Shown here: positions 2,191-46,594 of the stretch, piece after piece
How the letters are laid out: each line of letters opens with the position of its first letter
Position numbering within the stretch: position 1 is the first letter of the stretch
The notes under the pieces: generated by a model
The model's database searches: none
What the model saw: the letters and a program-made list of their open reading frames with translations, nothing else
What the model was told of the DNA's origin: nothing
Position numbers and translations under genes: made by a program
Sequence record: MT612989.1
Strand: one strand, 5' to 3'
DNA: 64,000 nucleotides

Positions 2191-2430
2191 TTATTTATAT
2201 GTCTGGTTATCAACCCATTGCTTGAGTTCTGGAAGATGACCTATGTATGTATCACCATGCATAGCAAGAGGCACGCGAATGTTGCGCACCCCACCAAGTT
2301 TCTCATGCAATTTATCGATATCAGATTGAGACTGTAACTCTATTACAGTGTACGGGACGTTTTTGAACTTACAGAGGGAAATTGCGTGACGACAGCCGTC
2401 ACAGTTGGGAATTGTGTATATCGTTATCAT
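2191..2430 (-). CDS. glutaredoxin (NrdC-like)
   Basis: CDGC active site, VP and IG motifs, 79 aa. Confidence 0.85.
   Translation of the reverse strand: MITIYTIPNCDGCRHAISLCKFKNVPYTVIELQSQSDIDKLHEKLGGVRNIRVPLAMHGDTYIGHLPELKQWVDNQTYK
2192..2199 (-). promoter_or_regulatory. T4-type late promoter TATAAATA for gp24
   Basis: exact consensus about 55 nt upstream of the gp24 start. Confidence 0.8.
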
Positions 2431-2448: not shown

Positions 2449-2479
2449 ATTATACGTCTGCCAAGGTGGTTATTAAACA
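2449..2479 (-). promoter_or_regulatory. TGTTTA-class (middle-like) promoter for glutaredoxin
   Basis: GTTTAA-N18-TATAAT. Confidence 0.6.
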
Positions 2480-2486
2480 AATCTTA

Positions 2487-2547
2487 CTAATACTTCTAAT
2501 ATTACTAAAAGCACTAATACTACTAAGATGAGACGGAATTTTTCCGC
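2487..2547 (-). repeat. 61-bp dispersed repeat copy 1 with 9-bp periodic TTAG units
   Basis: reverse complement matches 45166-45226 at 60/61 positions. Confidence 0.95.
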
Positions 2548-2554
2548 TCAAACC

Positions 2555-2576
2555 AAAAAAAGCCCCTTTCGGGGCT
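2555..2576 (-). terminator. intrinsic terminator
   Basis: AGCCCC-GAAA-GGGGCT hairpin followed by a U tract. Confidence 0.85.
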
Positions 2577-2594: not shown

Positions 2595-3410
2595 TTATAA
2601 ACCGTGAGATTTTTTGAAAGTGTCTAGACGCTTTTCGATTGTGTGAGCTTCTAGTTCAATAATGATGTACCAATCTTTGTATTTACCACGCTGTTCAAAT
2701 GACACTGACTTACAACCTTTGTGAGTAGTATTCATTACGATTTCTGCGATTGCGTCACGAGCAGCTTGACCACGTGCGTTTACTTTCTTAGCAGGCTTAG
2801 GCGCTTCAGCTTTCGGTGCAGGTGCTGCTACAGGTTCAACTGCTTTAGTATTTTCAGCTTTCTTAGCTTCGTGATCTGCTTTGATAGCGTTGAATGTTGA
2901 TGTTGCAACGCAACGAAGTTGACCTTCAGTTTCAGCTTTACGACCTTTCAAGTATAGAGCCTTGATATGTACTGGTTGAAAACGCTTAGTCAAACGATCC
3001 ATTTTCTGAACTACTTCAAGTTCACCTTGAGCGTTTTCGAAGAAAACAACGTACTTGCTATCTACAGCATCAGGGTTAGATACAGTTGAGCAACGCTTTG
3101 CATCGCCACCTAGTTGACGGTGTACACGCTTCCAGATAGCACCGTGACCACGTTCGTTGTAATCAGTGTAAGCAATCGCATGAGCCATTTCGTGAGTGAT
3201 TGTGTTGATTTGCTCTTCTTTAGTACGAGCGTTCAAGAATTCTTCAGAAATACGTAGCGTTTTAGTACGGTAGTTACAATCACCTAGTGCAGCTTTACGT
3301 TTTGAAAATTCAAATGACCAACCTTCTGCAATCAGATCGCGCTTCATCAAGTTGTTACCAGACATAAGGTCGATTGCGATAGCTTTCATTTCTGCTTTAG
3401 TGATTTTCAT
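2595..3410 (-). CDS. SprT-like zinc metalloprotease
   Basis: HEMAH zincin motif followed by HG..W; LGxC..RTKTLRIS upstream. Confidence 0.8.
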   Translation of the reverse strand: MKITKAEMKAIAIDLMSGNNLMKRDLIAEGWSFEFSKRKAALGDCNYRTKTLRISEEFLNARTKEEQINTITHEMAHAIAYTDYNERGHGAIWKRVHRQLGGDAKRCSTVSNPDAVDSKYVVFFENAQGELEVVQKMDRLTKRFQPVHIKALYLKGRKAETEGQLRCVATSTFNAIKADHEAKKAENTKAVEPVAAPAPKAEAPKPAKKVNARGQAARDAIAEIVMNTTHKGCKSVSFEQRGKYKDWYIIIELEAHTIEKRLDTFKKSHGL

Positions 3411-5809: not shown

Positions 5810-5812
5810 TCG

Positions 5813-5838
5813 AAAAAGGGAGCAAATTGCTCCCTTTT
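5813..5838. terminator. bidirectional terminator
   Basis: AAAAAGGGAGCAAATTGCTCCCTTTT between convergent genes. Confidence 0.85.
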
Positions 5839-5841
5839 CTT

Positions 5842-9445: not shown

Positions 9446-9481
9446 ATGATAATGAAAAGGGCTGCAAATTGCAACCCTTTT
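9446..9481 (-). promoter_or_regulatory. early promoter whose -35 lies inside a terminator hairpin
   Basis: TTGCAA-N17-TATCAT; hairpin AAAAGGGTTGCAATTTGCAGCCCTTTT. Confidence 0.65.
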
Positions 9482-14691: not shown

Positions 14692-15325
14692 ACATACGAA
14701 TCGCTTCGTTTAGTGCAGAATGCTTTTCAGTGTCAATGCCAGTCGGGTTAATAAGAATGAATTTACAGCCCGTCGCAGACAAATCCCAATGAATCGGGTT
14801 AATCTCAAGCGTCGAACCAACAACAATTGCAATGTCAGTCGGCAATAGAGTGTCAATATCACCCCAGAAGTGAGTGTATAATGGTGCGCCTTCATTGAAG
14901 AACACAACACCCGGTTTATCACGACGACCTGTACGCAACTCGTATTCATTGTACCCGATGTCAATAACTGTACTGTCTTTTGACGTGTAATCTTGCACGA
15001 TCTTTGTCAACTCACCGTGAATATGCTTAACGTCTTTACAACCTGCACGCTCAAGTAAATCTGATACGTTCGCAGTGTAGTTGTCAACGTCGTATTTTTC
15101 ACACAGTTCAGCAATTTTGTAGTGTGCTGAATTCGGGTGAACTTCAGCTAATTGTTTACGACGCTCATTGTAGAAACGATGTGTCACTTCATAATTGTTT
15201 GCAAATGTGTTGATGTTACACACTTCCATAATGTCGTGGTTTTCCCACAGACCGTTTGCGTCTCGAAACGTGCTGATACCTGATTCTGCATCAAGACCTG
15301 CACCGCTAAAAATAAAAATTCTCAA
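14564..15325 (-). CDS. Sir2/CobB-family NAD-dependent deacylase
   Basis: GAGLDAESGISTFRD, HIHGEL, VGSTL, INP motifs; TTG start with AGGA SD. Confidence 0.9.
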   Translation of the reverse strand: MRIFIFSGAGLDAESGISTFRDANGLWENHDIMEVCNINTFANNYEVTHRFYNERRKQLAEVHPNSAHYKIAELCEKYDVDNYTANVSDLLERAGCKDVKHIHGELTKIVQDYTSKDSTVIDIGYNEYELRTGRRDKPGVVFFNEGAPLYTHFWGDIDTLLPTDIAIVVGSTLEINPIHWDLSATGCKFILINPTGIDTEKHSALNEAIRMCDVFINKPATEAFDEIDKHIEEHISRNFPNGLLDYRGNSVNR

Positions 15326-15756
15326 AATGATTCCTTAATTGTCGCTGAGGGACCTTGTTGCCACTCAGAGTATTGTTGCTTAACTAACTCGTCAGGAATA
15401 TCATAACGCACGAAAAACGTGTTATAAACTTTTCCGTTTACAGTATTTGATTCACCGAACCACGTTTCAACTTCTTGAACTTTAAACCATTCTTTGGCTT
15501 CGGCTAACGTCATGCCAGTATAGCGGCGAATCTCATTATATACACCATACAATGCTTCTTTGATGTATATCGAATCCATTTCGCCGTCTTCATGAACAGG
15601 AATGGCAAAAATATCACAGTGTAATTCAGGGTCATACACGTCTGAACTGCGATATTCATCTGCGAGTCGTTCCATTAAATCATCACTCATGAGCATACCT
15701 CGATTAAAGTTTCGACTGCTTGTTTCGTTGGGTTTGCAATGGTTGCTAAATGCCAC
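15322..15756 (-). CDS. hypothetical protein
   Basis: ORF in operon; probable start near 15695. Confidence 0.6.
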   Translation of the reverse strand: MAFSNHCKPNETSSRNFNRGMLMSDDLMERLADEYRSSDVYDPELHCDIFAIPVHEDGEMDSIYIKEALYGVYNEIRRYTGMTLAEAKEWFKVQEVETWFGESNTVNGKVYNTFFVRYDIPDELVKQQYSEWQQGPSATIKESF

Positions 15757-15947
15757 TCTTCACCGTAAAGCTCATAACACGACCATGTCTGGTCTTCTTC
15801 GTTGAAGTAAGGACGATCAGTCCATCCCGTGACGTAACCGTTCCCGTCAACAGTCACATACTCAGTTTCGTGGTCTACAACTAACGGTATACCGCTCACG
15901 TTTACGACAGTTGAACAACCTTTGTTCATTGATAGTAAATAGCTCAT
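15687..15947 (-). CDS. hypothetical protein
   Basis: 86 aa ORF in operon. Confidence 0.6.
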   Translation of the reverse strand: MSYLLSMNKGCSTVVNVSGIPLVVDHETEYVTVDGNGYVTGWTDRPYFNEEDQTWSCYELYGEEWHLATIANPTKQAVETLIEVCS

Positions 15948-15948
15948 G

Positions 15949-16656
15949 TTATGCTCCTATTGTTTTCATCATTGCTCGTTTTTGAGCGGGTGTCATGTCC
16001 AATTCTTCAATTGAAGTCATGATTTCATCGATTTGACGCGAAGTTACTTGAATGTTGTCACACGTAATAGGCTTAGAATCGTCTATAACGCGCACTACGC
16101 GCTGTTTCATGTTCGGCAGTAGTACTTTACTAACCTGACAGCGTTTACGCGATACAGTACGTTTGAAGTCGCCTATCGTGATTTCAAAGTGTTTACCTTG
16201 GCGCTGTGCTTCAGTCGCGTACTTCACGTATAGCTTAGTGATCTCAAGATCAGTCATCGGTGTTTCAATAACTTCACCTTTGTAGCGATCAAGATATGAC
16301 TGAATAATGCTTTTGACTTTCGTCTCATCTGCAAGAAGACGTTGAATCTGCTTCAGTGTATGAGCTTCTTCAGCATTTGCTTTACTCACGGGCTGATTCT
16401 GCTCGATGTAGTTACACTTTACGTTGTTTGCAAGCTGAGTCACAAGAACACAGTTCTTTGGTTCATACGGCATAGACTCGTCAATACGCTCAACAGTCGC
16501 ACGCATTTTCTTGCTGCTTTGATTAAACGGGTGGTTTGTGTATGCACAACGACCACCGTTCTTCATGCTTTGTAATGTTTTCCATTGTTCTTCAGTGAAG
16601 TTGAATGCAATACCGCGTTTTTCACACTCTGCTTTCTTTGTGTTGTAGCTGCTCAT
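15949..16656 (-). CDS. protein with two tandem HNH-like (His-Me finger-like) repeats
   Basis: repeat 1 KRGIAFNFT..RCAYT..ERIDESMPYEPKNCVL; repeat 2 RQGKHFEIT..RCQVS..RVIDDSKPITCDNIQV. Confidence 0.55.
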   Translation of the reverse strand: MSSYNTKKAECEKRGIAFNFTEEQWKTLQSMKNGGRCAYTNHPFNQSSKKMRATVERIDESMPYEPKNCVLVTQLANNVKCNYIEQNQPVSKANAEEAHTLKQIQRLLADETKVKSIIQSYLDRYKGEVIETPMTDLEITKLYVKYATEAQRQGKHFEITIGDFKRTVSRKRCQVSKVLLPNMKQRVVRVIDDSKPITCDNIQVTSRQIDEIMTSIEELDMTPAQKRAMMKTIGA

Positions 16657-16659
16657 AAT

Positions 16660-17061
16660 TTATTCCTCAATCATACCTTGGCTTACTAGTGAACCTTTGA
16701 AACGTTTAAGAACGCCTTCCCATGCTTCGTCTGTGTAAGCATCAATATTGAACACTGCGCGAATCTTGTCAAAAAGTTCTCGACGCTGTTCGAGTGGCAT
16801 TTCTTTGCAGAATATCATGATTGCACCTTGATATTCACGTGCTGTCTCATGCAAACCTTTGTACATAAGATGATGTAGATCTAGACCTTTATGGTCAATT
16901 TCATGTGAAATCTCGCGTGATAGATGCTCACGCTTCATTTCAGTTTTGAAAATATACTTGCCTTCATCACCAGCAGCAAGTTGACCCATGTCGTAGATTT
17001 TCTTGTGCATCTCTTCAAGACGCCCGATTTTCTTTTCCCACATTTGATAAAATTCTGACAT
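16660..17061 (-). CDS. hypothetical protein
   Basis: 133 aa, GAGG SD. Confidence 0.65.
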   Translation of the reverse strand: MSEFYQMWEKKIGRLEEMHKKIYDMGQLAAGDEGKYIFKTEMKREHLSREISHEIDHKGLDLHHLMYKGLHETAREYQGAIMIFCKEMPLEQRRELFDKIRAVFNIDAYTDEAWEGVLKRFKGSLVSQGMIEE

Positions 17062-17063
17062 GA

Positions 17064-17393
17064 TTAACCCTCAAATGATTCGATAAGACGAAAGTTTTCG
17101 TAGTCTGCTTCTGAAGCAGCACGCCAATGTTTAAGTGAAACTTTACCCGCTGCTTTGATTTTGTCAATAAGCTGTGCTGACTCATAACCTGGCCATGCAC
17201 ATTTCTTTTCAACTGTAGTGCTCCACAGTTTGCGACTTTCACAATATGAACCTTTCGAATCCATGAAAAGCACTTCATGCAGCATGATTGTACCATCTTC
17301 AAGGCGCATTGCTACTTTTTGGTGTTCTGCACGCATAGAATAAACGACTTTGATTTCAGCAAATTTGATGTCGAATTTAGTTTGGTCAGTCAT
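17064..17393 (-). CDS. hypothetical early protein
   Basis: GAGAGA SD after an early promoter. Confidence 0.7.
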   Translation of the reverse strand: MTDQTKFDIKFAEIKVVYSMRAEHQKVAMRLEDGTIMLHEVLFMDSKGSYCESRKLWSTTVEKKCAWPGYESAQLIDKIKAAGKVSLKHWRAASEADYENFRLIESFEG

Positions 17394-17437
17394 AATGTTC
17401 TCTCTTTGTTTTAGGTCAACATCGTGTTGATGTAGCT

Positions 17438-17474
17438 ATAATACACAAAAGGGCTGACCGCAGTCAACCCTTTT
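17438..17474 (-). promoter_or_regulatory. early promoter/terminator composite
   Basis: TTGACT-N18-TATTAT; the -35 includes the upstream TGA stop and lies in hairpin AAAAGGGTTGAC-TGCG-GTCAGCCCTTTT. Confidence 0.6.
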
Positions 17475-18225
17475 CTTCAAGAATATTCAAATTATATTTC
17501 GGCTTCATGTAATGACTCATGTTTGCACAAATGAAATCACATGCCCAATTCTTAGTAAGCCGTGTAATTGTCTTCTTCAACGCATGATTCCACGCATTCA
17601 ACGGCATCATTCCGTGAACAATGTATCGTTCAATTGCGATTACCGAAATTTCTTCGTGGAATAAATTGATCTTGTCTTCGAACGACAATTGTTCGAACTT
17701 CTCTTTACTGACTAAAACATCACAGCCGTCTTTGAGAATTTTCTCATACAACGGGCGGTTAGGTGCTGCGACCATTCGATGAAGCTCATCATGTTCATAC
17801 ACGTATCGAACTTTGTCATTAAAGAAGTCGTCTGCGTCTTTGTTCAAACACAGATAATCTTTATTGCCAAGCTCTTTTCGCCAATGATTTGTCAACGCTG
17901 CGTATAGCTCAGGCTTGATTTTGCAGAATCGCGATAGCGCCATAACATCACGCTTGTGCTTGTCCCACAATGTCGAACCACCAAACTGACTGTACCCGAC
18001 TTTATGCTCATCCCAACCAAGATGACTGCATTTTATCGTGTAGATTTCGTCAGCAGTTGCTATATCACCGTCGAACATCTGCAATATATCGACGGGCATG
18101 ACAATAAAATCATCCCCGTCGTTAGCCGAGTCGGGCGAGTCTACGAATACATCTAGATCTTTAATGGTCTTACGCAGTCGAATACCATTATGATGTAACG
18201 CAGTTGACCCGACAACAATACGCAT
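17464..18225 (-). CDS. putative nucleotidyltransferase-fold protein
   Basis: N-terminal VVGSTAL...DLDVF, Pol-beta-like GS/DxD signature. Confidence 0.5.
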   Translation of the reverse strand: MRIVVGSTALHHNGIRLRKTIKDLDVFVDSPDSANDGDDFIVMPVDILQMFDGDIATADEIYTIKCSHLGWDEHKVGYSQFGGSTLWDKHKRDVMALSRFCKIKPELYAALTNHWRKELGNKDYLCLNKDADDFFNDKVRYVYEHDELHRMVAAPNRPLYEKILKDGCDVLVSKEKFEQLSFEDKINLFHEEISVIAIERYIVHGMMPLNAWNHALKKTITRLTKNWACDFICANMSHYMKPKYNLNILEEKG

Positions 18226-18521
18226 TACTGAGGAGTGCTCACGTATTGGGTGATTGTAACTTGCTTTGGGTAAACTTCAACGAAGTGGTCCCCGTAGTTG
18301 TCGTAACCGTGGTAGCTGTAGTAGCTGTATTCAGTCTTGAAGTAACGACCGTCTTTTTCAAGAATCGTGTAGCAGTACTCAGAACCACCTTCACCACCGC
18401 CGTCTTGGTCGATGAACTTCACACCAGGGAAGTCACCATAACCATCTAGTAGAAAGTCAAGATAGTCTTTGTCGTCGTAGTCTTCACCAAGAATTTCTTC
18501 AAATGTATAACGATTTGTCAT
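18225..18521 (-). CDS. hypothetical acidic Tyr-rich protein
   Basis: DQDGGGEGGSEYCY; in operon. Confidence 0.65.
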   Translation of the reverse strand: MTNRYTFEEILGEDYDDKDYLDFLLDGYGDFPGVKFIDQDGGGEGGSEYCYTILEKDGRYFKTEYSYYSYHGYDNYGDHFVEVYPKQVTITQYVSTPQ

Positions 18522-38707: not shown

Positions 38708-41700
38708 ATGTCAGAATTCCGCAGAGCATTTCGTGCGTCAGGTCTTGATGCAAGTGGTCAGAATGTCATTAACGTAGCAGACCCACGAGCAAATGAATTG
38801 TTCGACGGTATTAACCAAGGCTACTTTATTGAAGAGAACACTGTTCAAGAGTATGACCCAACACGAGATCACTATAAAGTAGACTTTATCGTTGAGTTCA
38901 ATCAACGTCTATACAAAAACATTACCGAAATCAATGCACCTGAACCTTTTGACTCGCAGAAGTGGCAGAAAATGCGTACCGACCCTGAATGGGAAGATAC
39001 TGATTCATCGGTAGGCGCAAACGTCGGTGACTTCTTGTTGTTAACAGCAAGCTCGGCAATCACTATTACACTGCCTGAAACACCATTAACAGGTGACACA
39101 GTTACAATCAAAGACGGTAAAGGCGTTCTTACAACTTACCCTTGTACGATTGCAGCAGCGGGCGGCTTGACGATTCAACATTACGGCATTGACGGTTCAA
39201 TTGAGTCTAAACCGAGTATTTCATTCAATACCCCTAACAGCACTATATTCTTAGTGTACAACGGTATTGCATGGACATATCAGATCAATCAAGAGTTATA
39301 CAATACGTATATTGACGACAGTCACCCAACTCAACAGGGTGGGTACTTATCAACTGGTGGTTATTTCACTAACGTTGGCGAGACAGTCACATATGACGGT
39401 TCAGTTAAGAAAATTGCAATTTCTGTACCACTGAACCCGAACGTGGGCGATACAATTCATCTTAAAGATGTTGCGTATCTTGAGAATCAAACGTCGATTC
39501 AAATCGGTGTGAACCCGACTGCTACGGGTCAGGTTATTCAAGACCCTATTTCAGGCGAACGTAGTTCTGTTATCAGTCTTGATACTATCGGCGGCGCTGA
39601 TATCACATTTATCGATGATAACGGTACTGGCGTATGGGTAATCACAATCGCGAACAACCCGCATTTATGGAACTATGTCGGTGATTCAAGCGCGGTTGAA
39701 TTGAAGCCTCGTTCTCGTTACGCTATCGAAATCGCAGATGCTGTTCCTGCAATGACGATCACACTACCAGAAAAACCAGCAGATGGTGACTGGATTGAGA
39801 TCTCACACAACAAAACAGCTCATAAGAAAGTAACGATTCAAGTTCACCCGAATTTCGGTGATGATGACCCAGGTCACGGCCCCGATGAATACAAAGTATT
39901 CTTGGACTTTGAAACATATCGTTATCAAAAATACCGTCATTACGTTGATTTCGTTCCATTCTTCGTTGAATCATTCGAAATTAGTGATTATGACAGCGGT
40001 TATTCACTAGTTCTATACTACGACGCGAGTCGTAAAGTATGGTCGTTCGGTAACATCGCGACTCGTATCGATATCGCTGATGAACTATACCGTAAACGCC
40101 CGGGTATCGTGCCATTAGCTGACCCAACGGAAGCTCTAGCACACGGGATTGAATATGCGCACCCTGAAGATGCAGCAGACCCTTGGGCTGATCAAAACCC
40201 ACTGAAAGACCACGTAATCACGGTAGAGACGCTTGACGCTCGTCGTGCAGGTGAACAGCAAGTTGGTATGGCTCGTGTTGCTACTCTTGGAACTGATGAA
40301 GCTCTTGAAGAATCGCGTTCTGGTACGTTTGTTCGTTACCCAGATACAAACTTCAGACATGATCTGTTCATAACACCACGTAGTTTGAATGCGCGTACAG
40401 CAACTGAAACACGTCGCGGTGTAGTTGAAATCGCAACTCAAAACGAGACGCGAAGCACAACTAACGATGTTCAAGTTCTAACACCGATGAAATTCCACGC
40501 TGCACAAGCTGAAGAAGATCTAACAGGTGTTGCAAAACTAGTCGAAGCGTCGAACAACATCAATGCTGGTGGTATTGTTACATCAACAGCGAATATGCGT
40601 TCAGACCGTTCAGTAAATGGTCTTGACAATACAGTATATGATAAAACTGATCATCTGCGTATCGTAACGCCAAAAATGCTTGATGAGTATCGTGCTACAG
40701 AGAATCAACCTGGTACATTATGGGTTGCTAAGAGCAGTGAACTTCGCATCAACGACTCAACAGTTGATAACGCGATCATCACGCCTAAGAAATTAGCAGC
40801 GTGGAAAGCAAGCTCAACGGTTCGTGGTATTGCTCGTTCTGCTACACAGTCTGAAGCAAATGCAACAACAGGAACTGGTGAATCGTGGACAACAGTCTTC
40901 ATCACACCAGAAACGTTGAATAGCAGAACAGCAACTGAATCACGTCGTGGTGTTGCGGAAATCGCAACTCAAACTGAAGTTGACTCAGGGACAGACGATA
41001 CTCGTATTGTTTCACCACTTAAACTGAAGACATGGCTTGATCGTGATCATTTCGTGACAGCAGGAACAGATGGTCTATCGCATACTGGTACAGTGTGGGG
41101 CGACGTTACATTCAGCATCGCGTCAGCGACTGAAACACAACGTGGTACACTACAAGTTGCGACTCAAGTAGAAGCGAATGCTCAAACTGGTGCGCTTGAT
41201 GATGTAATCATCACACCACAGAAGTTAAATGCGCGTCGTGCTACAGAAACGCAAACCGGTATCGTGCGTCTTGCGACTCAAGCTGAAGTCGAAGCAGCGA
41301 CAGCTAGTAATGAAATTGTTGTTACTCCGAGTGATTTGCTACACTGGACTCGTTACTCTGACAGCTCACGTGCAAATGAAAGTCGTTATGGTAACGTACA
41401 AATCGCAACACCAGCAGAAACATTTGTTGGTAACAGTACAGACGGTTCAACACAAGCGTATACGTCGTACTTGCGTGTTCCATATGCAGTTTCACCTTAC
41501 GGGTTGCACTATGCATTGCGTAACTACTTGCCACTAAACGCTAAAGCTGATGACTCAGAATTACTAGATGGCTTGAACAGTACACAATTTGCACGTCGTG
41601 ACATCGACCAAACAATCAATGGCACGTATACGTTTAGTGGCGAATTCGTGCAAACGAAAGGTGGCGGTTATTTCTTAGTTGCAAACCCAACGAACGACGC

Positions 41701-42423: not shown

Positions 42424-45117
42424 ATGTACGAAAGACTTAAACGTGACGGCGATTGGCTATTAATCTTTCGCCATGATTCAACAGGAGGTGTGTTTTTCAC
42501 CTCCGATGCTGAAGCACGCAGCGTCGGGACAGATCCCGACGTTGAACAAAAATTCAGTGCGTTGAACTCACTTGAGGAATTTCGCCGTGAAGACGGCAAA
42601 TTCCAATTCAAGCTTCATTACCCAGAATTAGATGTAACAAACATTTGGAAGCAAAGTAGTAACTTTGCAGCTATTGATGTAGGTCAATATCTAACTAACG
42701 GTAACTTGGCTGGTGGCGAATACGTTACTGAGCAAAACGCAAAAATAGGTTCGTGGGTTATAGTTGAAAAAGAAAACCCAGGGTCGTCAAAATACGTTGT
42801 AGAACAACCAACTGCGGCACTCGAAGATCAATTGCGATTTCAAGTGCCACAATCGCGTTTAAAACCAAACAAAACATACACATTGTCATGTTGGGTTGGG
42901 TATGAAATAGACGCTGATCACGACACAGCAGCTATATTTCACGCTCGTTGGTATGACGGTTCCAATAATGATTATACATTAGGCGAACATACTGCGGGTG
43001 ACGTGTTCGAATCAGCAGGAAACGAAATAATAGTTGACGGGATTCTTTGGAAACGTCACTATGCTCGTTTCACAACGCCTAGTACTCTTTCATCAAGTAG
43101 CATGTACTGGTATTGTTGTTATACAACTGATACAGGTAAATTACCAACAGGTAAGCGTTGGCTTACAAACTTCATGATCACAGACTCGCAAATCGTCAAA
43201 AACTATACTGGCGATTACGACGCTACAACTCGCGGCGTTAGAGGCTATGAACCGATTTACATCGAAAGCACTGCAAATGATTGGGGTGGAATAGAATATA
43301 GTGTTTCAGCCAGTACGTTAGCAGACGGTTCAGTTGACATATCAAATTGGTATTGGGCTATCGGTGCGAAACGTTCTTGGCCAGACGGGGCTACTACATT
43401 CCCGGGACCGGGTATAAACGTCAATCAAGCTGAATTGTGGGTATATGCTCCTGTTGGTTCTAGAATCGGTGAATATGAAGTGTCAGCTAGGCATATCAGA
43501 GATTTTTCAAACAATAATATCAGACTGTTAGCAACAGGTGTCGCGAACGGAAGTTCAAACCTAGCATCATGTTATATAAACGATGTTAGCGTATTTACAC
43601 CCGAAGCTAAACAACAATATCAAGTTCGTTTGATTATATTCAACGACGATATGACAGTCAAAACTAATAGAAAATATCTTCTGAGTAGTTCAACAGAACG
43701 TAGCAACTTCATCAACGGTCTGAACGGGTTGACAACAGAGCCGTTTGTTATTTTATCAAATGGGTCAATGTACGCAGATTCTGCGGTAGATGCTGCAATT
43801 CAACAGTATCACCCGATTGAGTATCGCGGTAGCTCTTACTTCAGTCAATACAGTTATAGTTACTGTGCATTCGGGACAGGTCAATTAGGTATTGTATATG
43901 ATCGTTGTATGTTCGACCATGAATCTGACGGTGACAGTGTTGTTGATACTGCATTCGAAGATAAAGCAGGGATTGGTTCAAACGGGTACGGAATTCCTTT
44001 ACTCGAAACAATGACTGTTCCTACTGATAAACGTTATCTTCTTTCAGATTATGGTGTAATCGACGGACAGTACTTGATTTACAAAGCTCGTGCATGTATT
44101 GATCGAAATTCAGCAATCGCGAATGCAGACAAAATGGCGAATCTTCGATTCTACAACGTAGTTGGCGATGAAGTAGGCAGACAGAATATTCATTTTTACA
44201 GTGCAGAGAAAAAAGAAACTCAAGAATTTTTCGTACAAGTACCAACAGGTGCAGTTAAATTTGGAGTTTGGTCTGACTTACAACCAGAGTACTTTGATTA
44301 CGTCATATTGACTAAAGGCGGAATGTCAACCCCGAGTGGTATACCTCATATGATTTCGAACATAAACGGTATCGCTGCTCAAGAGATTGTCAATTCACCG
44401 ATTACAGGTAACGTAGTTGATGACGATAGCTGGTGGCGAGCATATAACGCAGATTCAAACTTGTATGCAGGTATTAATATGCCAGTACAAGAAATTGACA
44501 ACGTTCAATGGGGTAATTATGTACTTTCAGGCGGTGAAAAGTGTTTCACACGTACAGCAGGCTCATCATCTCCAATTGAAATGCAAGAAGTATCAATCGA
44601 TCCATCTCGACCGTATTTCCTATCATTGTGGGTTAATGCTATCGACAAACAAAATAGCTTCTTATACTTCAGTGTACGAGTCAAAAATTCAACAGGTGAT
44701 TATAGAACTCTGAGATTGTCAGACGGTAGCAGAACATCTACATATATCAATATTGATAGAGTGTATGGGTTCCCTGCATCAAATAATCAGTGGATATTGC
44801 TACAAGGGTATATTTTACCACACGATTGGACTGATGCACAACATCAAGCGTTTGCTGATAAGTTTAACAACTATTTCGGTGTTATAAACCCTGAAGATGA
44901 TCCAAGTTACCAAACGTCAAAGGGTGTTGGTTACTATACAACAGATGCAGACAAGTCATTTAGATGGAATAGTGATGATGATAAGTTGATACTTCGATAT
45001 AAAGACGAAACAGCCGTTGAGAATCAAGTAATGTGGGCTTTCCCAATTGTTACTGAAGTCAATGTTGCTAGTTCGTTTGAAGACAACTTCACTGCAATCG
45101 ACTTTGCAATGAAATAA
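42424..45117 (+). CDS. 35: tail fibre hinge/distal connector gp35-like, multi-lectin-domain
   Basis: directly after gp34; fibrinogen-like domain with an insertion, ILEI/GG-like domain. Confidence 0.7.
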   Translation: MYERLKRDGDWLLIFRHDSTGGVFFTSDAEARSVGTDPDVEQKFSALNSLEEFRREDGKFQFKLHYPELDVTNIWKQSSNFAAIDVGQYLTNGNLAGGEYVTEQNAKIGSWVIVEKENPGSSKYVVEQPTAALEDQLRFQVPQSRLKPNKTYTLSCWVGYEIDADHDTAAIFHARWYDGSNNDYTLGEHTAGDVFESAGNEIIVDGILWKRHYARFTTPSTLSSSSMYWYCCYTTDTGKLPTGKRWLTNFMITDSQIVKNYTGDYDATTRGVRGYEPIYIESTANDWGGIEYSVSASTLADGSVDISNWYWAIGAKRSWPDGATTFPGPGINVNQAELWVYAPVGSRIGEYEVSARHIRDFSNNNIRLLATGVANGSSNLASCYINDVSVFTPEAKQQYQVRLIIFNDDMTVKTNRKYLLSSSTERSNFINGLNGLTTEPFVILSNGSMYADSAVDAAIQQYHPIEYRGSSYFSQYSYSYCAFGTGQLGIVYDRCMFDHESDGDSVVDTAFEDKAGIGSNGYGIPLLETMTVPTDKRYLLSDYGVIDGQYLIYKARACIDRNSAIANADKMANLRFYNVVGDEVGRQNIHFYSAEKKETQEFFVQVPTGAVKFGVWSDLQPEYFDYVILTKGGMSTPSGIPHMISNINGIAAQEIVNSPITGNVVDDDSWWRAYNADSNLYAGINMPVQEIDNVQWGNYVLSGGEKCFTRTAGSSSPIEMQEVSIDPSRPYFLSLWVNAIDKQNSFLYFSVRVKNSTGDYRTLRLSDGSRTSTYINIDRVYGFPASNNQWILLQGYILPHDWTDAQHQAFADKFNNYFGVINPEDDPSYQTSKGVGYYTTDADKSFRWNSDDDKLILRYKDETAVENQVMWAFPIVTEVNVASSFEDNFTAIDFAMK

Positions 45118-45140
45118 AAGAGCCCTTCGGGGCTTTTTTT
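45118..45140 (+). terminator. intrinsic terminator
   Basis: AGCCC-TTCG-GGGCT followed by a U tract. Confidence 0.9.
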
Positions 45141-45165
45141 ATACGCGAAGCGAAAACGGTAAGAG

Positions 45166-45236
45166 GCGGAAAAATTCCGTCTCATCTTAGTAGTATTAGT
45201 GCTTTTAGTGATATTAGAAGTATTAGAGGGATTAGT
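45166..45236 (+). repeat. 61-bp dispersed repeat copy 2, extended to six 9-bp-spaced TTAG units
   Basis: TTAGTAGTA TTAGTGCTT TTAGTGATA TTAGAAGTA TTAGAGGGA TTAGTG. Confidence 0.95.
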
Positions 45237-45266
45237 GTTTAAGCAACCAATGATGAAATGTATACT
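45236..45266 (+). promoter_or_regulatory. TGTTTA-class promoter for uvsY
   Basis: GTTTAA-N18-TATACT. Confidence 0.65.
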
Positions 45267-45284: not shown

Positions 45285-45698
45285 ATGAAGCTACAAGATT
45301 TAAAAATTGAATATCACGAAGACGTGAAAATTGACACAACTGCTTTAGAAACAGCAGCTATTCGAATTCCCGTTCTTCATGCGAAGTGGCTTGCATACCG
45401 AGCCGATGCAAGACAACTACTTATCAAAGCTGAAATGAAAATGGAAGCTGTGAGAAAAGACCGCTGGCTCTTTTATAGCGGCAAACATGACGATGAAGTT
45501 TGTGATTTCATCGTAGAAAAGAGTGAAATGAAATATGCTCTTGCGGGTGATGAATATCTTCAACGTGCAATTGCTACTTTTCAACACATGAAAGATGTGT
45601 TATCATTCATCGAAGAAGCTTTGAAAGGCATTAGTCAAATGGGCTTCACAATCAAACACATTATTGACAACAGAAAAATTGAGAGTGGTATAGTATGA
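45285..45698 (+). CDS. uvsY: recombination mediator UvsY
   Basis: D.KID.T.L, LHAKWL, R..YSGK, EKSEMK..LAGD. Confidence 0.92.
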   Translation: MKLQDLKIEYHEDVKIDTTALETAAIRIPVLHAKWLAYRADARQLLIKAEMKMEAVRKDRWLFYSGKHDDEVCDFIVEKSEMKYALAGDEYLQRAIATFQHMKDVLSFIEEALKGISQMGFTIKHIIDNRKIESGIV

Positions 45699-46559: not shown

Positions 46560-46589
46560 TAAAAAAAGGGAGCAAATTGCTCCCTTTTT
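46560..46589. terminator. bidirectional terminator
   Basis: same hairpin sequence as 5813-5838. Confidence 0.85.
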
Positions 46590-46594
46590 CGTAT

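What the first reader, a model, noticed from the sequence alone, without database searches (positions are those of the whole stretch)
2487..2547. 61-bp element with 9-bp-periodic TTAG array, copy 1 (glutaredoxin promoter)
Seen: the intergenic sequence GCGGAAAAATTCCGTCTCATC(TTAGnnnnn)x5 on the minus strand matches 45166-45226 (plus strand, 43 kb away) at 60/61 nt. Both copies lie between a terminator and a TGTTTA-class promoter and carry a small CGGAA/TTCCG palindrome followed by TTAG units every 9 bp. Such identity between unrelated loci implies selection or recent copying. Inference: iteron array or protein-loading site.
Basis: partly seen in the sequence, partly recalled or inferred. Interest (0 to 1): 0.65.

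Follow-up and report, generated by a model that had tools for sequence, protein, structure and literature searches.

The report
Six-copy hairpin-plus-TTAG phage DNA signal
The repeat is real: it is one of six conserved, same-facing copies of a roughly 100-base signal (small DNA hairpins followed by five or six TTAG motifs nine bases apart) found at the same six gene boundaries in all KVP40-like Vibrio phages and also in a Vibrio genomic island; it most likely marks places where the phage DNA is opened to start copying, but nothing yet proves this.

Summary
In detail: window 2487-2547 (-) matches 45166-45226 (+) at 60/61 nt. They are two of six copies per genome. Every full-length genome among 51 KVP40-like Vibrio phage records has six places, and in the eight genomes examined they lie at the same six co-directional gene junctions, always facing the way the flanking genes are transcribed.

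Each module has up to four parts:
- a GCG(N)NAGC mini-hairpin, optional, present in 31 of 46 phage copies;
- a 9-bp hairpin with compensatory changes;
- a CATC linker;
- five or six TTAG units at an exact 9-nt period, on a strand almost free of C.

The arrays are among the 0.03-0.64% most easily melted 54-bp stretches of the genome and are spaced more evenly than chance (P about 0.007). A family of Vibrio integrative islands carries the module in a 1.3-kb non-coding region with iterons.

My best reading (about 35%) is an origin-type unwinding and helicase/primase loading site that acts as single-stranded DNA. Rivals are a double-strand protein-binding array, an RNA element, a clamp-loading or packaging site, and a recombination cassette. 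No RNA or replication data exist.

This scan has reported the same element at least eight times on other pieces. I found no published description. The earlier claim that the islands carry a T4-type clamp was not reproduced.

The parts
2595..3410 (-). Upstream gene of copy 1 (SprT-like protein)
   Evidence: ORF; annotated SprT-like in 100%-identical phage records.
2561..2576 (-). Intrinsic terminator stem-loop before copy 1, followed by a T run (2560..2554)
2530..2549 (-). Copy 1 hairpin: GAG-CGGAA / AAA / TTCCG-TCTC. This copy lacks the mini-hairpin.
   Evidence: Sequence; alignment and pair counts; folds of sister copies.
2482..2526 (-). Copy 1 array: five TTAG units at a 9-nt period, preceded by the invariant linker ATC (2529..2527)
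   Evidence: The same copy in G001 is the least stable 0.03% of 54-bp windows.
2449..2478 (-). Sigma-70-like early promoter of grx (-35 region 2478..2471, -10 TATAAT 2454..2449)
2191..2430 (-). Glutaredoxin (nrdH-like) gene downstream of copy 1
42424..45117 (+). Upstream gene of copy 2 (gp35-like long-tail-fibre hinge protein)
   Evidence: ORF; KVP40 annotation of the orthologous locus.
45121..45140 (+). Terminator-like stem-loop AGCCC-TTCG-GGGCT plus a T run
   Evidence: Read directly. The scan reported only the mirror hairpin on the other strand.
45145..45151 (+). Mini-hairpin GCGAAGC (GCGNAGC class) on the top strand
   Evidence: tally of 31/46 phage copies with none on the bottom strand; definition of the motif in PMC13037366.
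45163..45183 (+). Copy 2 hairpin, 9-bp stem GAGGCGGAA / AAA / TTCCGTCTC with one G.T pair
45187..45240 (+). Copy 2 array: six TTAG units at a 9-nt period. The last unit overlaps the -35 region.
45237..45266 (+). T4-early-type promoter of uvsY (GTTTAA, 18 nt, TATACT)
   Evidence: Read by eye from then on the T4 model; not called by the sigma-70 scan.
45285..45698 (+). uvsY gene downstream of copy 2

Best explanation
The element is a cis-acting module that works when the DNA is single-stranded. I read it as an origin-type unwinding site where the phage replisome (replicative helicase and primase, or an unknown initiator) is loaded.

Proposed steps, all inferred:
1. The 45-54 bp TTAG array is the easiest place to melt in its neighbourhood. 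Negative supercoiling behind RNA polymerase leaving the adjacent early promoter would help open it, as gidA transcription does at E. coli oriC (from my own knowledge).
2. Once open, the top strand (the non-transcribed strand of the flanking genes) folds into the 9-bp hairpin and, in most copies, a GCG(N)NAGC mini-hairpin. These resist single-strand-binding protein and keep the bubble open.
3. Just 3' of the hairpins lies a C-free tract of about 50 nt that is predicted to be unstructured as DNA, with TTAG every 9 nt. This serves as the loading pad, and the invariant TTAG units are periodic contacts for the loaded protein.
4. A T4-type helicase moves 5'->3' on that strand. It would therefore launch a fork in the direction of transcription, which would explain why all copies face the same way as the genes.

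Shown here: the anatomy, conservation, polarity, melting rank, spacing, and the presence of the module in islands. Not shown: unwinding, protein binding, or initiation.
For: Copy number and place: six places in every full-length genome among 51 records, and the same six junctions in 8 genomes.

Conservation: the element is 0.75-0.88 identical across genomes, while the flanks are mostly 0.27-0.69; the grx locus flanks are also conserved.

Single-strand structure: the hairpin keeps pairing through G-C to C-G flips at two pairs and, in F86, A-T to T-A flips with a 20-nt loop insertion. No shuffle out of 500 reaches the observed covariation score. Both hairpin variants coexist in one genome, which argues against a palindromic protein site.

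Mini-hairpin: 31 of 46 phage copies carry one of five variants (GCGAAGC, GCGCAGC, GCGTCAGC, GCGTTAGC, GCGATAGC). All fit the DNA mini-hairpin rule GCGNAGC/GCGNNAGC, and none lies on the other strand. PMC13037366 reports that such hairpins are far more stable as DNA than as RNA, bind SSB poorly, and occur at priming origins of phages G4, St-1 and alpha3 and at RSF1010 ssiA. The three tetraloop variants are not GNRA, the RNA-favoured class.

Melting: the arrays are the least stable 0.03-0.64% of 54-bp windows (about 3 SD from the mean), and the least stable 54-bp window within +-500 bp starts within 6 bp of each array start. The top strand is 1.2% C and is predicted unstructured as DNA.

Genome-scale pattern: the smallest gap is 26 kb of 247 kb, and P(all gaps at least that large) = 0.007. 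All six copies are flanked by ORFs of their own strand.

Position: copy 2 lies within about 100 bp of the start of uvsY, where the T4 record annotates oriF. T4 itself uses several dispersed origins (PMC3016281).

Islands: four of five island contexts carry the module, with 6, 7 or 8 units, in a 1.3-kb non-coding region. That region also holds GAA-loop hairpins on both strands and GTACGC..GTGTAC iterons.
Against: No experiment or sequencing data bear on replication, and no RNA or raw-read runs were available.

No initiator or binding protein is identified.

The adjacent early promoter lies downstream of the array and points away from it, unlike T4 oriF/oriG, where the transcript enters the unwinding element.

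AT-richness alone produces low duplex stability, and hundreds of other windows are as unstable.

At one locus the array runs straight into a ribosome-binding site and start codon, so there it is certainly part of an mRNA.

As RNA the array can fold through A-U and G.U pairs, so an RNA role is not excluded.

The excess of G.T wobble on the top strand (4-5 events against 1) is not significant.

One island variant lacks the module, so it is dispensable there.
Confidence: 0.35

Rival explanations
1. The array is a double-strand protein-binding site. A phage (or host) protein binds the invariant TTAG boxes one after another and coats about 50 bp at gene boundaries. It would act as an operator, insulator or nucleoid-organising site, for instance by tuning the adjacent early promoter or blocking read-through. 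The arrangement resembles the short invariant boxes with variable spacers bound by ribbon-helix-helix proteins (ParG tetramer boxes, omega heptads, MetJ boxes; from my own knowledge).
For: An invariant 4-bp core with variable 5-bp spacers at an exact 9-bp period. Unit number changes in steps of 9 bp, from 5 to 8 units. Spacers are homogenised within genomes: paralogue identity in F86 and 1.081.O is 0.80-0.85, against 0.73-0.77 for orthologues, as expected if the copies track one binding protein. In two loci the array abuts the -35 box. A small protein family (phrog_29350) is shared by the phage and the island.
Against: The distance from the array to the promoter varies without helical phasing. 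One locus and the island show no fixed partner promoter. The conserved hairpins with compensatory changes, and the strand-specific mini-hairpin, have no role in a purely double-strand site. The even genome-wide spacing is not explained. Pfam did not confirm a ribbon-helix-helix fold for the shared small protein.
Confidence: 0.2
2. The module acts as RNA. It is transcribed by read-through or inside operons, and the hairpin nucleates binding of a single-strand-binding or regulatory protein along the A/U/G tract. Possible partners would behave like gp32 on its own leader or RegA on UAA repeats, or the tract could be an RNase E entry site. The result would be control of processing, stability or translation of neighbouring messages.
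For: Strict co-orientation with transcription (6/6). At the lipoprotein locus the array supplies the GGAG ribosome-binding site and runs into the start codon in seven genomes. Two loci have no terminator upstream. G.U-compatible changes occur in the stem. Most unit junctions fit the RN|WUU RNase E preference (from my own knowledge).
Against: Four of six loci place a strong intrinsic terminator immediately upstream, and no promoter can be seen in front of the module. At five loci the downstream gene's promoter lies after the module. The mini-hairpin variants follow the DNA rule rather than the RNA GNRA rule, and they are weak as RNA. There is no Rfam match. Predicted RNA pairings of the array differ between copies. 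Even spacing over 247 kb is not explained.
Confidence: 0.2
3. The module is a polar loading or entry site for another DNA machine. It could be a strand-specific nick or clamp-loading site that feeds sliding clamps to late promoters downstream (in T4 the late enhancer is a nick in the non-transcribed strand; from my own knowledge). Or it could be a packaging-series start (pac) that a satellite-like island copies.
For: Strand specificity on the non-transcribed strand, even spacing (P about 0.007), and presence in mobile islands. Satellites typically copy helper packaging or replication signals (from my own knowledge).
Against: There is no evidence of nicks or fixed ends. Deposited genomes start at unrelated coordinates, as expected for permuted genomes. 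No raw reads were available to look for ends. The hairpins are unexplained for a terminase site. No T4-type clamp was found in the islands I examined.
Confidence: 0.1
4. The module is a passive or selfish repeat: a recombination cassette of the PeSL kind, or a miniature mobile element kept alike by gene conversion, with no dedicated function.
For: It sits at terminator-promoter junctions like PeSLs (PMC4122927). It shows concerted evolution, a tandem duplication in phage 1.081.O, and presence or absence in islands flanked by a 120-bp direct repeat.
Against: Copy number and position are fixed (six places in every full-length record; the same junctions in the eight genomes examined), unlike PeSLs, which mark variable regions. 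Conservation is position-specific (TTAG invariant, spacers free). Hairpin changes are compensatory. Spacing is over-dispersed. All of these indicate selection on the sequence itself.
Confidence: 0.08

Closest known systems
T4 oriE iteron cluster with an early promoter (PMC3016281)
   Same: An array of evenly spaced direct repeats next to an early-mode promoter in a T4-like phage, one of several dispersed candidate origins. The role of the repeats is likewise unproven.
   Different: The T4 repeats are 12 nt at a 24-nt period and lie inside the gene 5 coding repeat, and there is only one such site. Here the repeats are non-coding, have a 4-nt core at a 9-nt period, are joined to hairpins, and occur as six copies.
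T4 oriF/oriG R-loop origins: promoter plus downstream DNA unwinding element (PMC3016281)
   Same: An easily melted tract beside a promoter; a polarity equal to the direction of transcription; helicase access to the non-template strand. One copy lies at the uvsY start, where the T4 record annotates oriF.
   Different: Here the unwinding tract lies upstream of the promoter, so the promoter's transcript does not enter it. The T4 origins share no sequence motif, whereas these six are near-identical.
Single-strand initiation signals with mini-hairpins: G4/St-1/alpha3 complementary-strand origins and RSF1010 ssiA/ssiB (PMC13037366)
   Same: GCGNAGC/GCGNNAGC (and, in the island, CCGAAGG) hairpins on one defined strand next to single-stranded DNA. 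GCGTTAGC is the very variant found in St-1 and alpha3.
   Different: Those signals are recognised by DnaG or RepB' primases on ssDNA phage or plasmid templates. No TTAG array is known there, and recognition here is untested.
Bacterial DnaA-box / DnaA-trio basal unwinding system (PMC8287927)
   Same: A duplex landmark followed by a phased single-strand motif. The trio consensus 3'-GAT-5' reads 5'-TAG-3', and the array begins TAG-TAG-WAT-TAG.
   Different: No conserved DnaA box is present (4 of 48 copies have a 9-mer with 2 mismatches, at unrelated positions). The period is 9 nt, not 3. T4-like phages are not known to use DnaA.
PeSL promoter-early stem-loop cassettes of T4-like phages, including nt-1/KVP40 (PMC4122927)
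   Same: Repeated intergenic modules consisting of a stem-loop terminator followed by a sigma-70-like early promoter. The six TTAG modules sit at junctions of this type.
   Different: The paper does not describe the TTAG array, the hairpin or the mini-hairpin. PeSLs cluster in hyperplastic regions and mark indels, whereas these six sites are positionally fixed.

Membership tests
Iteron-type replication origin | Array of direct repeats at regular spacing | tested here: met
   5-7 TTAG units at an exact 9-nt period in 46 phage copies.
Iteron-type replication origin | Adjacent or overlapping easily melted (AT-rich) unwinding region | tested here: met
   The arrays rank in the least stable 0.03-0.64% of 54-bp windows, and the local least-stable window starts within 6 bp of each array start.
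Iteron-type replication origin | Cognate initiator protein that binds the repeats | not testable with these tools
   No candidate identified. The small protein shared by phage and island (phrog_29350) has no recognised DNA-binding family.
Iteron-type replication origin | Initiation of DNA synthesis at the site | not testable with these tools
   Only assembled contigs of DNA runs were available.
T4 oriF/oriG-type R-loop origin | Promoter placed so that its transcript enters the unwinding element | tested here: not met
   The promoter lies 3' of the array and points away from it.
T4 oriF/oriG-type R-loop origin | Position homologous to a mapped T4 origin | tested here: inconclusive
   One of six copies lies at the uvsY start, like T4 oriF. 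The gp3|gp1 copy corresponds to a T4 position about 3.4-4 kb from oriE. The other four have no counterpart.
DNA mini-hairpin (GCGNAGC / GCGNNAGC) | Sequence pattern with variation confined to the loop N positions, on one strand | tested here: met
   31 of 46 copies; five variants, all conforming; none on the other strand. Rule taken from PMC13037366.
DNA mini-hairpin (GCGNAGC / GCGNNAGC) | Physical formation of the hairpin in vivo | not testable with these tools
   Standard DNA energy parameters do not capture it.
DnaA-box / DnaA-trio unwinding system | DnaA box within 16 bp of at least three NAN trios | tested here: not met
   The trios are present (TAG TAG WAT TAG), but only 4 of 48 copies have a 9-mer with 2 mismatches or fewer, at non-conserved positions.
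PeSL cassette | Stem-loop immediately upstream of a sigma-70-like early promoter, ribosome-binding site and start codon | tested here: inconclusive
   This context holds at 4 of 6 loci, but about 100 nt of extra conserved module separates the stem-loop from the promoter.
PeSL cassette | Association with variable regions and indels between related phages | tested here: not met
   The same six junctions occur in 8 genomes, and all full-length records have six places.
Known RNA families (Rfam 15) | Match at or near the gathering score | tested here: not met
   No match overlaps the element in six loci at E up to 1.

The most novel reading that the evidence does not exclude
KVP40-like phages use a sequence-defined, six-fold repeated origin. 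A duplex-unwinding TTAG array with hairpin landmarks loads the T4-type helicase/primase in a fixed direction, so that forks start co-directionally with transcription. Vibrio integrative islands copy this signal to have themselves replicated by the infecting phage. This would be the first common sequence motif for the origins of a T4-like phage, and a new route of satellite hijacking.
Probability: 0.25. Interest if true: 0.8.

Novelty: new variant of a known kind. Interest (0 to 1): 0.6.

Why it matters
T4, the model phage of this family, has several origins that share no motif, and how most of them fire is still unclear (PMC3016281). A relative with six near-identical, polar, evenly spread candidate sites would make origin recognition in T4-like phages directly testable, using one probe, one deletion series and one marker-frequency experiment. 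The module's presence in Vibrio islands, which in one variant also carry anti-phage genes (GmrSD, AbiC), suggests that islands exploit a phage cis-signal. That is relevant to phage-satellite biology and to KVP40-like phages being developed for aquaculture phage therapy. If the module instead proves to be a protein-binding or RNA element, it is still an undescribed, clade-wide regulatory signal.

Tried and rejected
**Coding micro-ORF.** One record annotates a 34-aa CDS over the array. I rejected this: there is no conserved start codon, the frame relation to the downstream lipoprotein start differs between genomes, and the hairpin changes are compensatory at the nucleotide level.

**Rfam.** No family matches.

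**MotA-type middle promoter in the array.** Only 3-4 copies contain TGCTT, and there is no suitable -10 box.

**Classical upstream activator or UP element.** The offsets from array start to the -35 box are 48, 50, 61, 71 and 76 nt, with no phasing.

**DnaA box.** Not conserved.

**Expression.** No RNA run holds the phage. Read laying returned only assembly contigs, which break at the repeat and show about 4-fold summed depth there, so they confirm only that it is multi-copy in four independent studies.

**Bacterial genomes.** The strict pattern found nothing in 185,579 species genomes. A BLAST of 285 Vibrio species genomes found only a coding repeat.

**T4-type clamp in islands (claimed by earlier notes).** PF02916 was absent from 285 Vibrio genomes, but the 14 control genomes did not ring either, so that result is weak. 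Pfam scans of ten island proteins and tblastn of twenty against the phage genome also found no clamp. The claim was not reproduced for the island family I found.

**Island proteins of 336 and 401 aa.** Nothing in Pfam, PDB sequences or the Atlas. The 401-aa protein matches phrog_13366 (function unknown) but nothing in the phage collection.

**Ribbon-helix-helix reading of the small protein shared by phage and island.** By eye only; not supported by Pfam.

**Strand assignment from wobble pairs.** 4-5 events against 1, not significant.

**Packaging-site idea from record start coordinates.** Starts are arbitrary, so uninformative.

**KVP40 genome paper (PMC180978).** Not held, so I cannot exclude that it mentions the repeat.

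Full report
**1. Observation.**
The minus strand of window 2547..2487 and the plus strand of 45166..45226 differ at a single base. The match extends to 71 nt at 93%. A 28-nt core occurs exactly twice in the window and never in 100 shuffles. Three phased TTAG motifs occur 10 times against 0.3 expected, and 8 of the 10 lie in the two copies.

Copy 1 lies between the terminator after a SprT-like gene and a sigma-70-like promoter in front of a glutaredoxin gene. Copy 2 lies between the terminator after a gp35-like gene and uvsY.

**2. Identity of the genome and copy number.**
The window is a KVP40-like Vibrio phage, 100% identical at this locus to VH7D, phi-Grn1 and others. The nearest whole record (G001, 246,964 bp) holds six copies. 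A BLAST of the 101-nt module against 50,697 phage records hits 51 records, all Vibrio phages. Every full-length genome has six places; F86 has five and three short records have four, four and one.

Flanking-gene comparison assigns the copies of eight genomes (VH7D, KVP40, PVA8, VS1, nt-1, D527, F86, 1.081.O) to the same six junctions (KVP40 annotation):
- SprT-like | glutaredoxin
- a junction upstream of the rIIA cluster
- hypothetical | lipoprotein
- gp3 | gp1
- gp12 | wac
- gp35 | uvsY

F86 lacks the lipoprotein-locus copy. In 1.081.O no glutaredoxin-locus copy was found, and the gp3|gp1 junction carries a tandem pair.

**3. Anatomy.**
Reading in the direction of the flanking genes:
- (a) At 4 of 6 loci, the intrinsic terminator of the upstream gene.
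- (b) In 31 of 46 phage copies, GCGAAGC or a variant (GCGCAGC, GCGTCAGC, GCGTTAGC, GCGATAGC), always on the top strand.
- (c) A purine-rich spacer of about 12-15 nt ending in GAG.
- (d) A hairpin whose full stem is 9 bp, GAGGCGGAA / AAA / TTCCGTCTC.
- (e) The invariant linker (C)ATC.
- (f) TTAG units at an exact 9-nt period: six in 31 copies, five in 12 and seven in 1, with two copies interrupted by point changes.

In an ungapped alignment of 47 copies, the TTAG of units 1, 2 and 5 is invariant. The TTAG of units 3 and 4 is at least 90% conserved at every position. The 5-nt spacers vary. The top strand of the arrays is 40% T, 35% A, 24% G and 1.2% C.

**4. Evidence for selection.**
Across the eight genomes the hairpin and array are 0.75-0.88 identical. 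The sequences immediately upstream and downstream are mostly 0.27-0.69, and only the glutaredoxin locus has conserved flanks.

The stem keeps pairing through changes on both sides. Two adjacent G-C pairs are C-G in the variant GCCCAA/TTGGGC, which occurs at three loci and coexists with GCGGAA/TTCCGC in the same genome. In one F86 copy two A-T pairs are T-A and the loop holds a 20-nt insertion. No shuffle out of 500 reaches the observed covariation score or the paired fraction. Two hairpin variants in one genome argue for a folded single strand rather than a palindromic site for one dimeric protein.

In the two most divergent genomes, copies resemble each other (0.80 and 0.85) more than they resemble their orthologues (0.73-0.77). 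The copies therefore evolve in concert.

**5. DNA or RNA?**
A 2026 review by the discoverers defines the mini-hairpin DNA motif as GCGNAGC or GCGNNAGC (PMC13037366). It states that:
- the RNA versions are much less stable;
- the DNA form binds SSB poorly;
- the motif is frequent at phage replication initiation sites (G4 has GCGAAAGC; St-1 and alpha3 have GCGTTAGC);
- it also occurs at RSF1010 ssiA (CCGAAGG).

All five variants found here obey that rule. The three tetraloop variants are not GNRA, the RNA-favoured class. The motif is strand-specific. This tilts the reading toward single-stranded DNA.

Wobble changes in the long hairpin are mostly G.T on the top strand, but the count (4-5 events against 1) is not significant. 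As DNA the array is predicted unstructured. As RNA it can pair with itself through A-U and G.U pairs, with a different register in each copy. There is no Rfam match.

**6. Genome-scale properties.**
All six copies are flanked on both sides by ORFs of their own strand. The arrays are the least stable 0.03-0.64% of all 54-bp windows of G001 (about -57 against a mean of -70.1, SD 3.9 kcal/mol). In each case the least stable 54-bp window within +-500 bp starts within 6 bp of the array start.

The gaps between copies are 55.5, 51.3, 26.0, 26.0, 42.8 and 45.3 kb. For six random points on a circle, the probability that every gap is at least 26 kb is 0.007, by formula and by simulation, and the same holds for KVP40.

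The distance from the start of the array to the -35 box is 48, 50, 61, 71 and 76 nt. At the lipoprotein locus there is no promoter, and the array supplies the ribosome-binding site. The module is therefore not a fixed part of any promoter.

**7. The island.**
An exact-pattern scan of metagenome contigs found the true module on two short contigs. An exact-protein look-up from those contigs led to NCBI genomes. A flanking gene is 99% identical to that of a Vibrio species genome.

The module lies in a 1.3-kb non-coding region of an island of about 12.5 kb bounded by a large serine recombinase. Two island lineages use different recombinases and different integration sites. The region also holds GAA-loop hairpins on both strands (GCGAAGC, CCGAAGG and their complements). 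It also holds GTACGC..GTGTAC iterons just before a small helix-turn-helix gene.

The array has 6, 7 or 8 units in different islands. One island variant lacks the module, together with one copy of a 120-bp direct repeat.

The island shares only two small proteins with the phage. I found no T4-type clamp, so that earlier claim was not reproduced for this island family.

**8. Interpretation.**
The combination points to a genome-level, single-strand-dependent function: strand-specific hairpins of a class known from priming origins, a highly meltable C-free tract, strict polarity, over-dispersed spacing, and retention by islands in an iteron-bearing control region. An origin-type unwinding and loading site is the most economical reading.

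T4 has at least five dispersed origins without a common motif. Its oriE has iterons and an early promoter, and in oriF/oriG the helicase-primase gains access to the non-template strand (PMC3016281). A 5'->3' helicase loaded on the top-strand pad would move with transcription, which would account for the polarity.

Copy 2 lies within about 100 bp of the uvsY start, where the T4 record places oriF.

Differences from T4 are clear:
- T4's oriE repeats are 12 nt at a 24-nt period inside the gene 5 coding repeat.
- In oriF/oriG the promoter fires into the unwinding element, whereas here it fires away from it.

I put this reading at about 0.35. The rivals (double-strand binding array, RNA element, clamp/nick or pac site, passive cassette) are listed with their evidence. 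None is excluded, because no expression, binding or replication data exist.

**9. Novelty.**
The PeSL paper on nt-1/KVP40 describes terminator-promoter cassettes but not this module. Searches for KVP40 with repeats, iterons, origins or transcriptomes found nothing relevant. The original KVP40 genome paper is not held.

This scan has already reported the same element at least eight times from other windows or pieces, with the same descriptive conclusion. New here:
- the mini-hairpin class
- the 9-bp stem
- the melting rank
- the spacing test
- the concerted-evolution measure
- the comparison with the T4 oriE and oriF records
- the island unit-number series, and the non-reproduction of the clamp claim

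Noticed in passing
L318:8546-10001 (= L377:7172-8627); also L378:7148-8465 and L379:7186-8465: The island's 1.3-kb non-coding region holds three top-strand GAA-loop mini-hairpins followed about 70 nt later by two bottom-strand GCGAAGC hairpins. This resembles paired single-strand initiation signals. It also holds four or more GTACGC..GTGTAC iterons and three copies of a promoter-like unit (TTGAAG..TATACA).
   Followed up: partly
L317:1-3505 and 14745-18339: The one island variant without the TTAG module lies next to an AEP-type primase-helicase gene and a Fic gene, and it carries GmrSD and AbiC-like defence genes. Variants with the module lack these. With only one such variant, a link between having the module and lacking a primase of its own is no more than a lead.
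   Followed up: no
L326:10326-10532 (G001 about 90.3 kb) and L318:8367-8546: A 68-aa phage ORF next to phoH and a 59-aa island ORF belong to the same family of unknown function (phrog_29350; 45% identity over 38 aa). By eye the sequence looks like a ribbon-helix-helix fold, but Pfam gives no support.
   Followed up: partly
L340:1460-1760 (Vibrio phage 1.081.O): Two complete modules lie in tandem about 165 bp apart at the gp3|gp1 junction. Each includes the upstream TGTCT..GAAGAAA box and the mini-hairpin. No copy was found at the glutaredoxin locus in this genome.
   Followed up: partly
L009:1655-1756 (phage D527): A 34-aa 'hypothetical protein' CDS is annotated over the hairpin and TTAG array. 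It is probably a gene-caller artefact. In this copy two units read TTCG.
   Followed up: partly
window 5811-5841 and 46561-46591: An identical 26-nt palindromic terminator-like hairpin (AAAAAGGGAGCAAATTGCTCCCTTTT) occurs at two loci 41 kb apart, and a 77%-identical third copy lies at 9455-9480.
   Followed up: no
window 40367-41282: Three direct repeats of 76 nt (64-79% identical), spaced 531 and 309 nt apart. They are probably an internal repeat of a coding region.
   Followed up: no
window 2788-2866: The SprT-like gene contains a short periodic stretch. Contigs from other samples differ there by a 12-nt insertion (after 2804) or a 36-nt deletion (2814-2851), which are in-frame length variants.
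   Followed up: no
L335:2714-3405 (KVP40 79213-79904): Downstream of the KVP40 copy near rIIA there is a 690-bp stretch without an annotated gene, and locus tag 0136 is missing.
   Followed up: no
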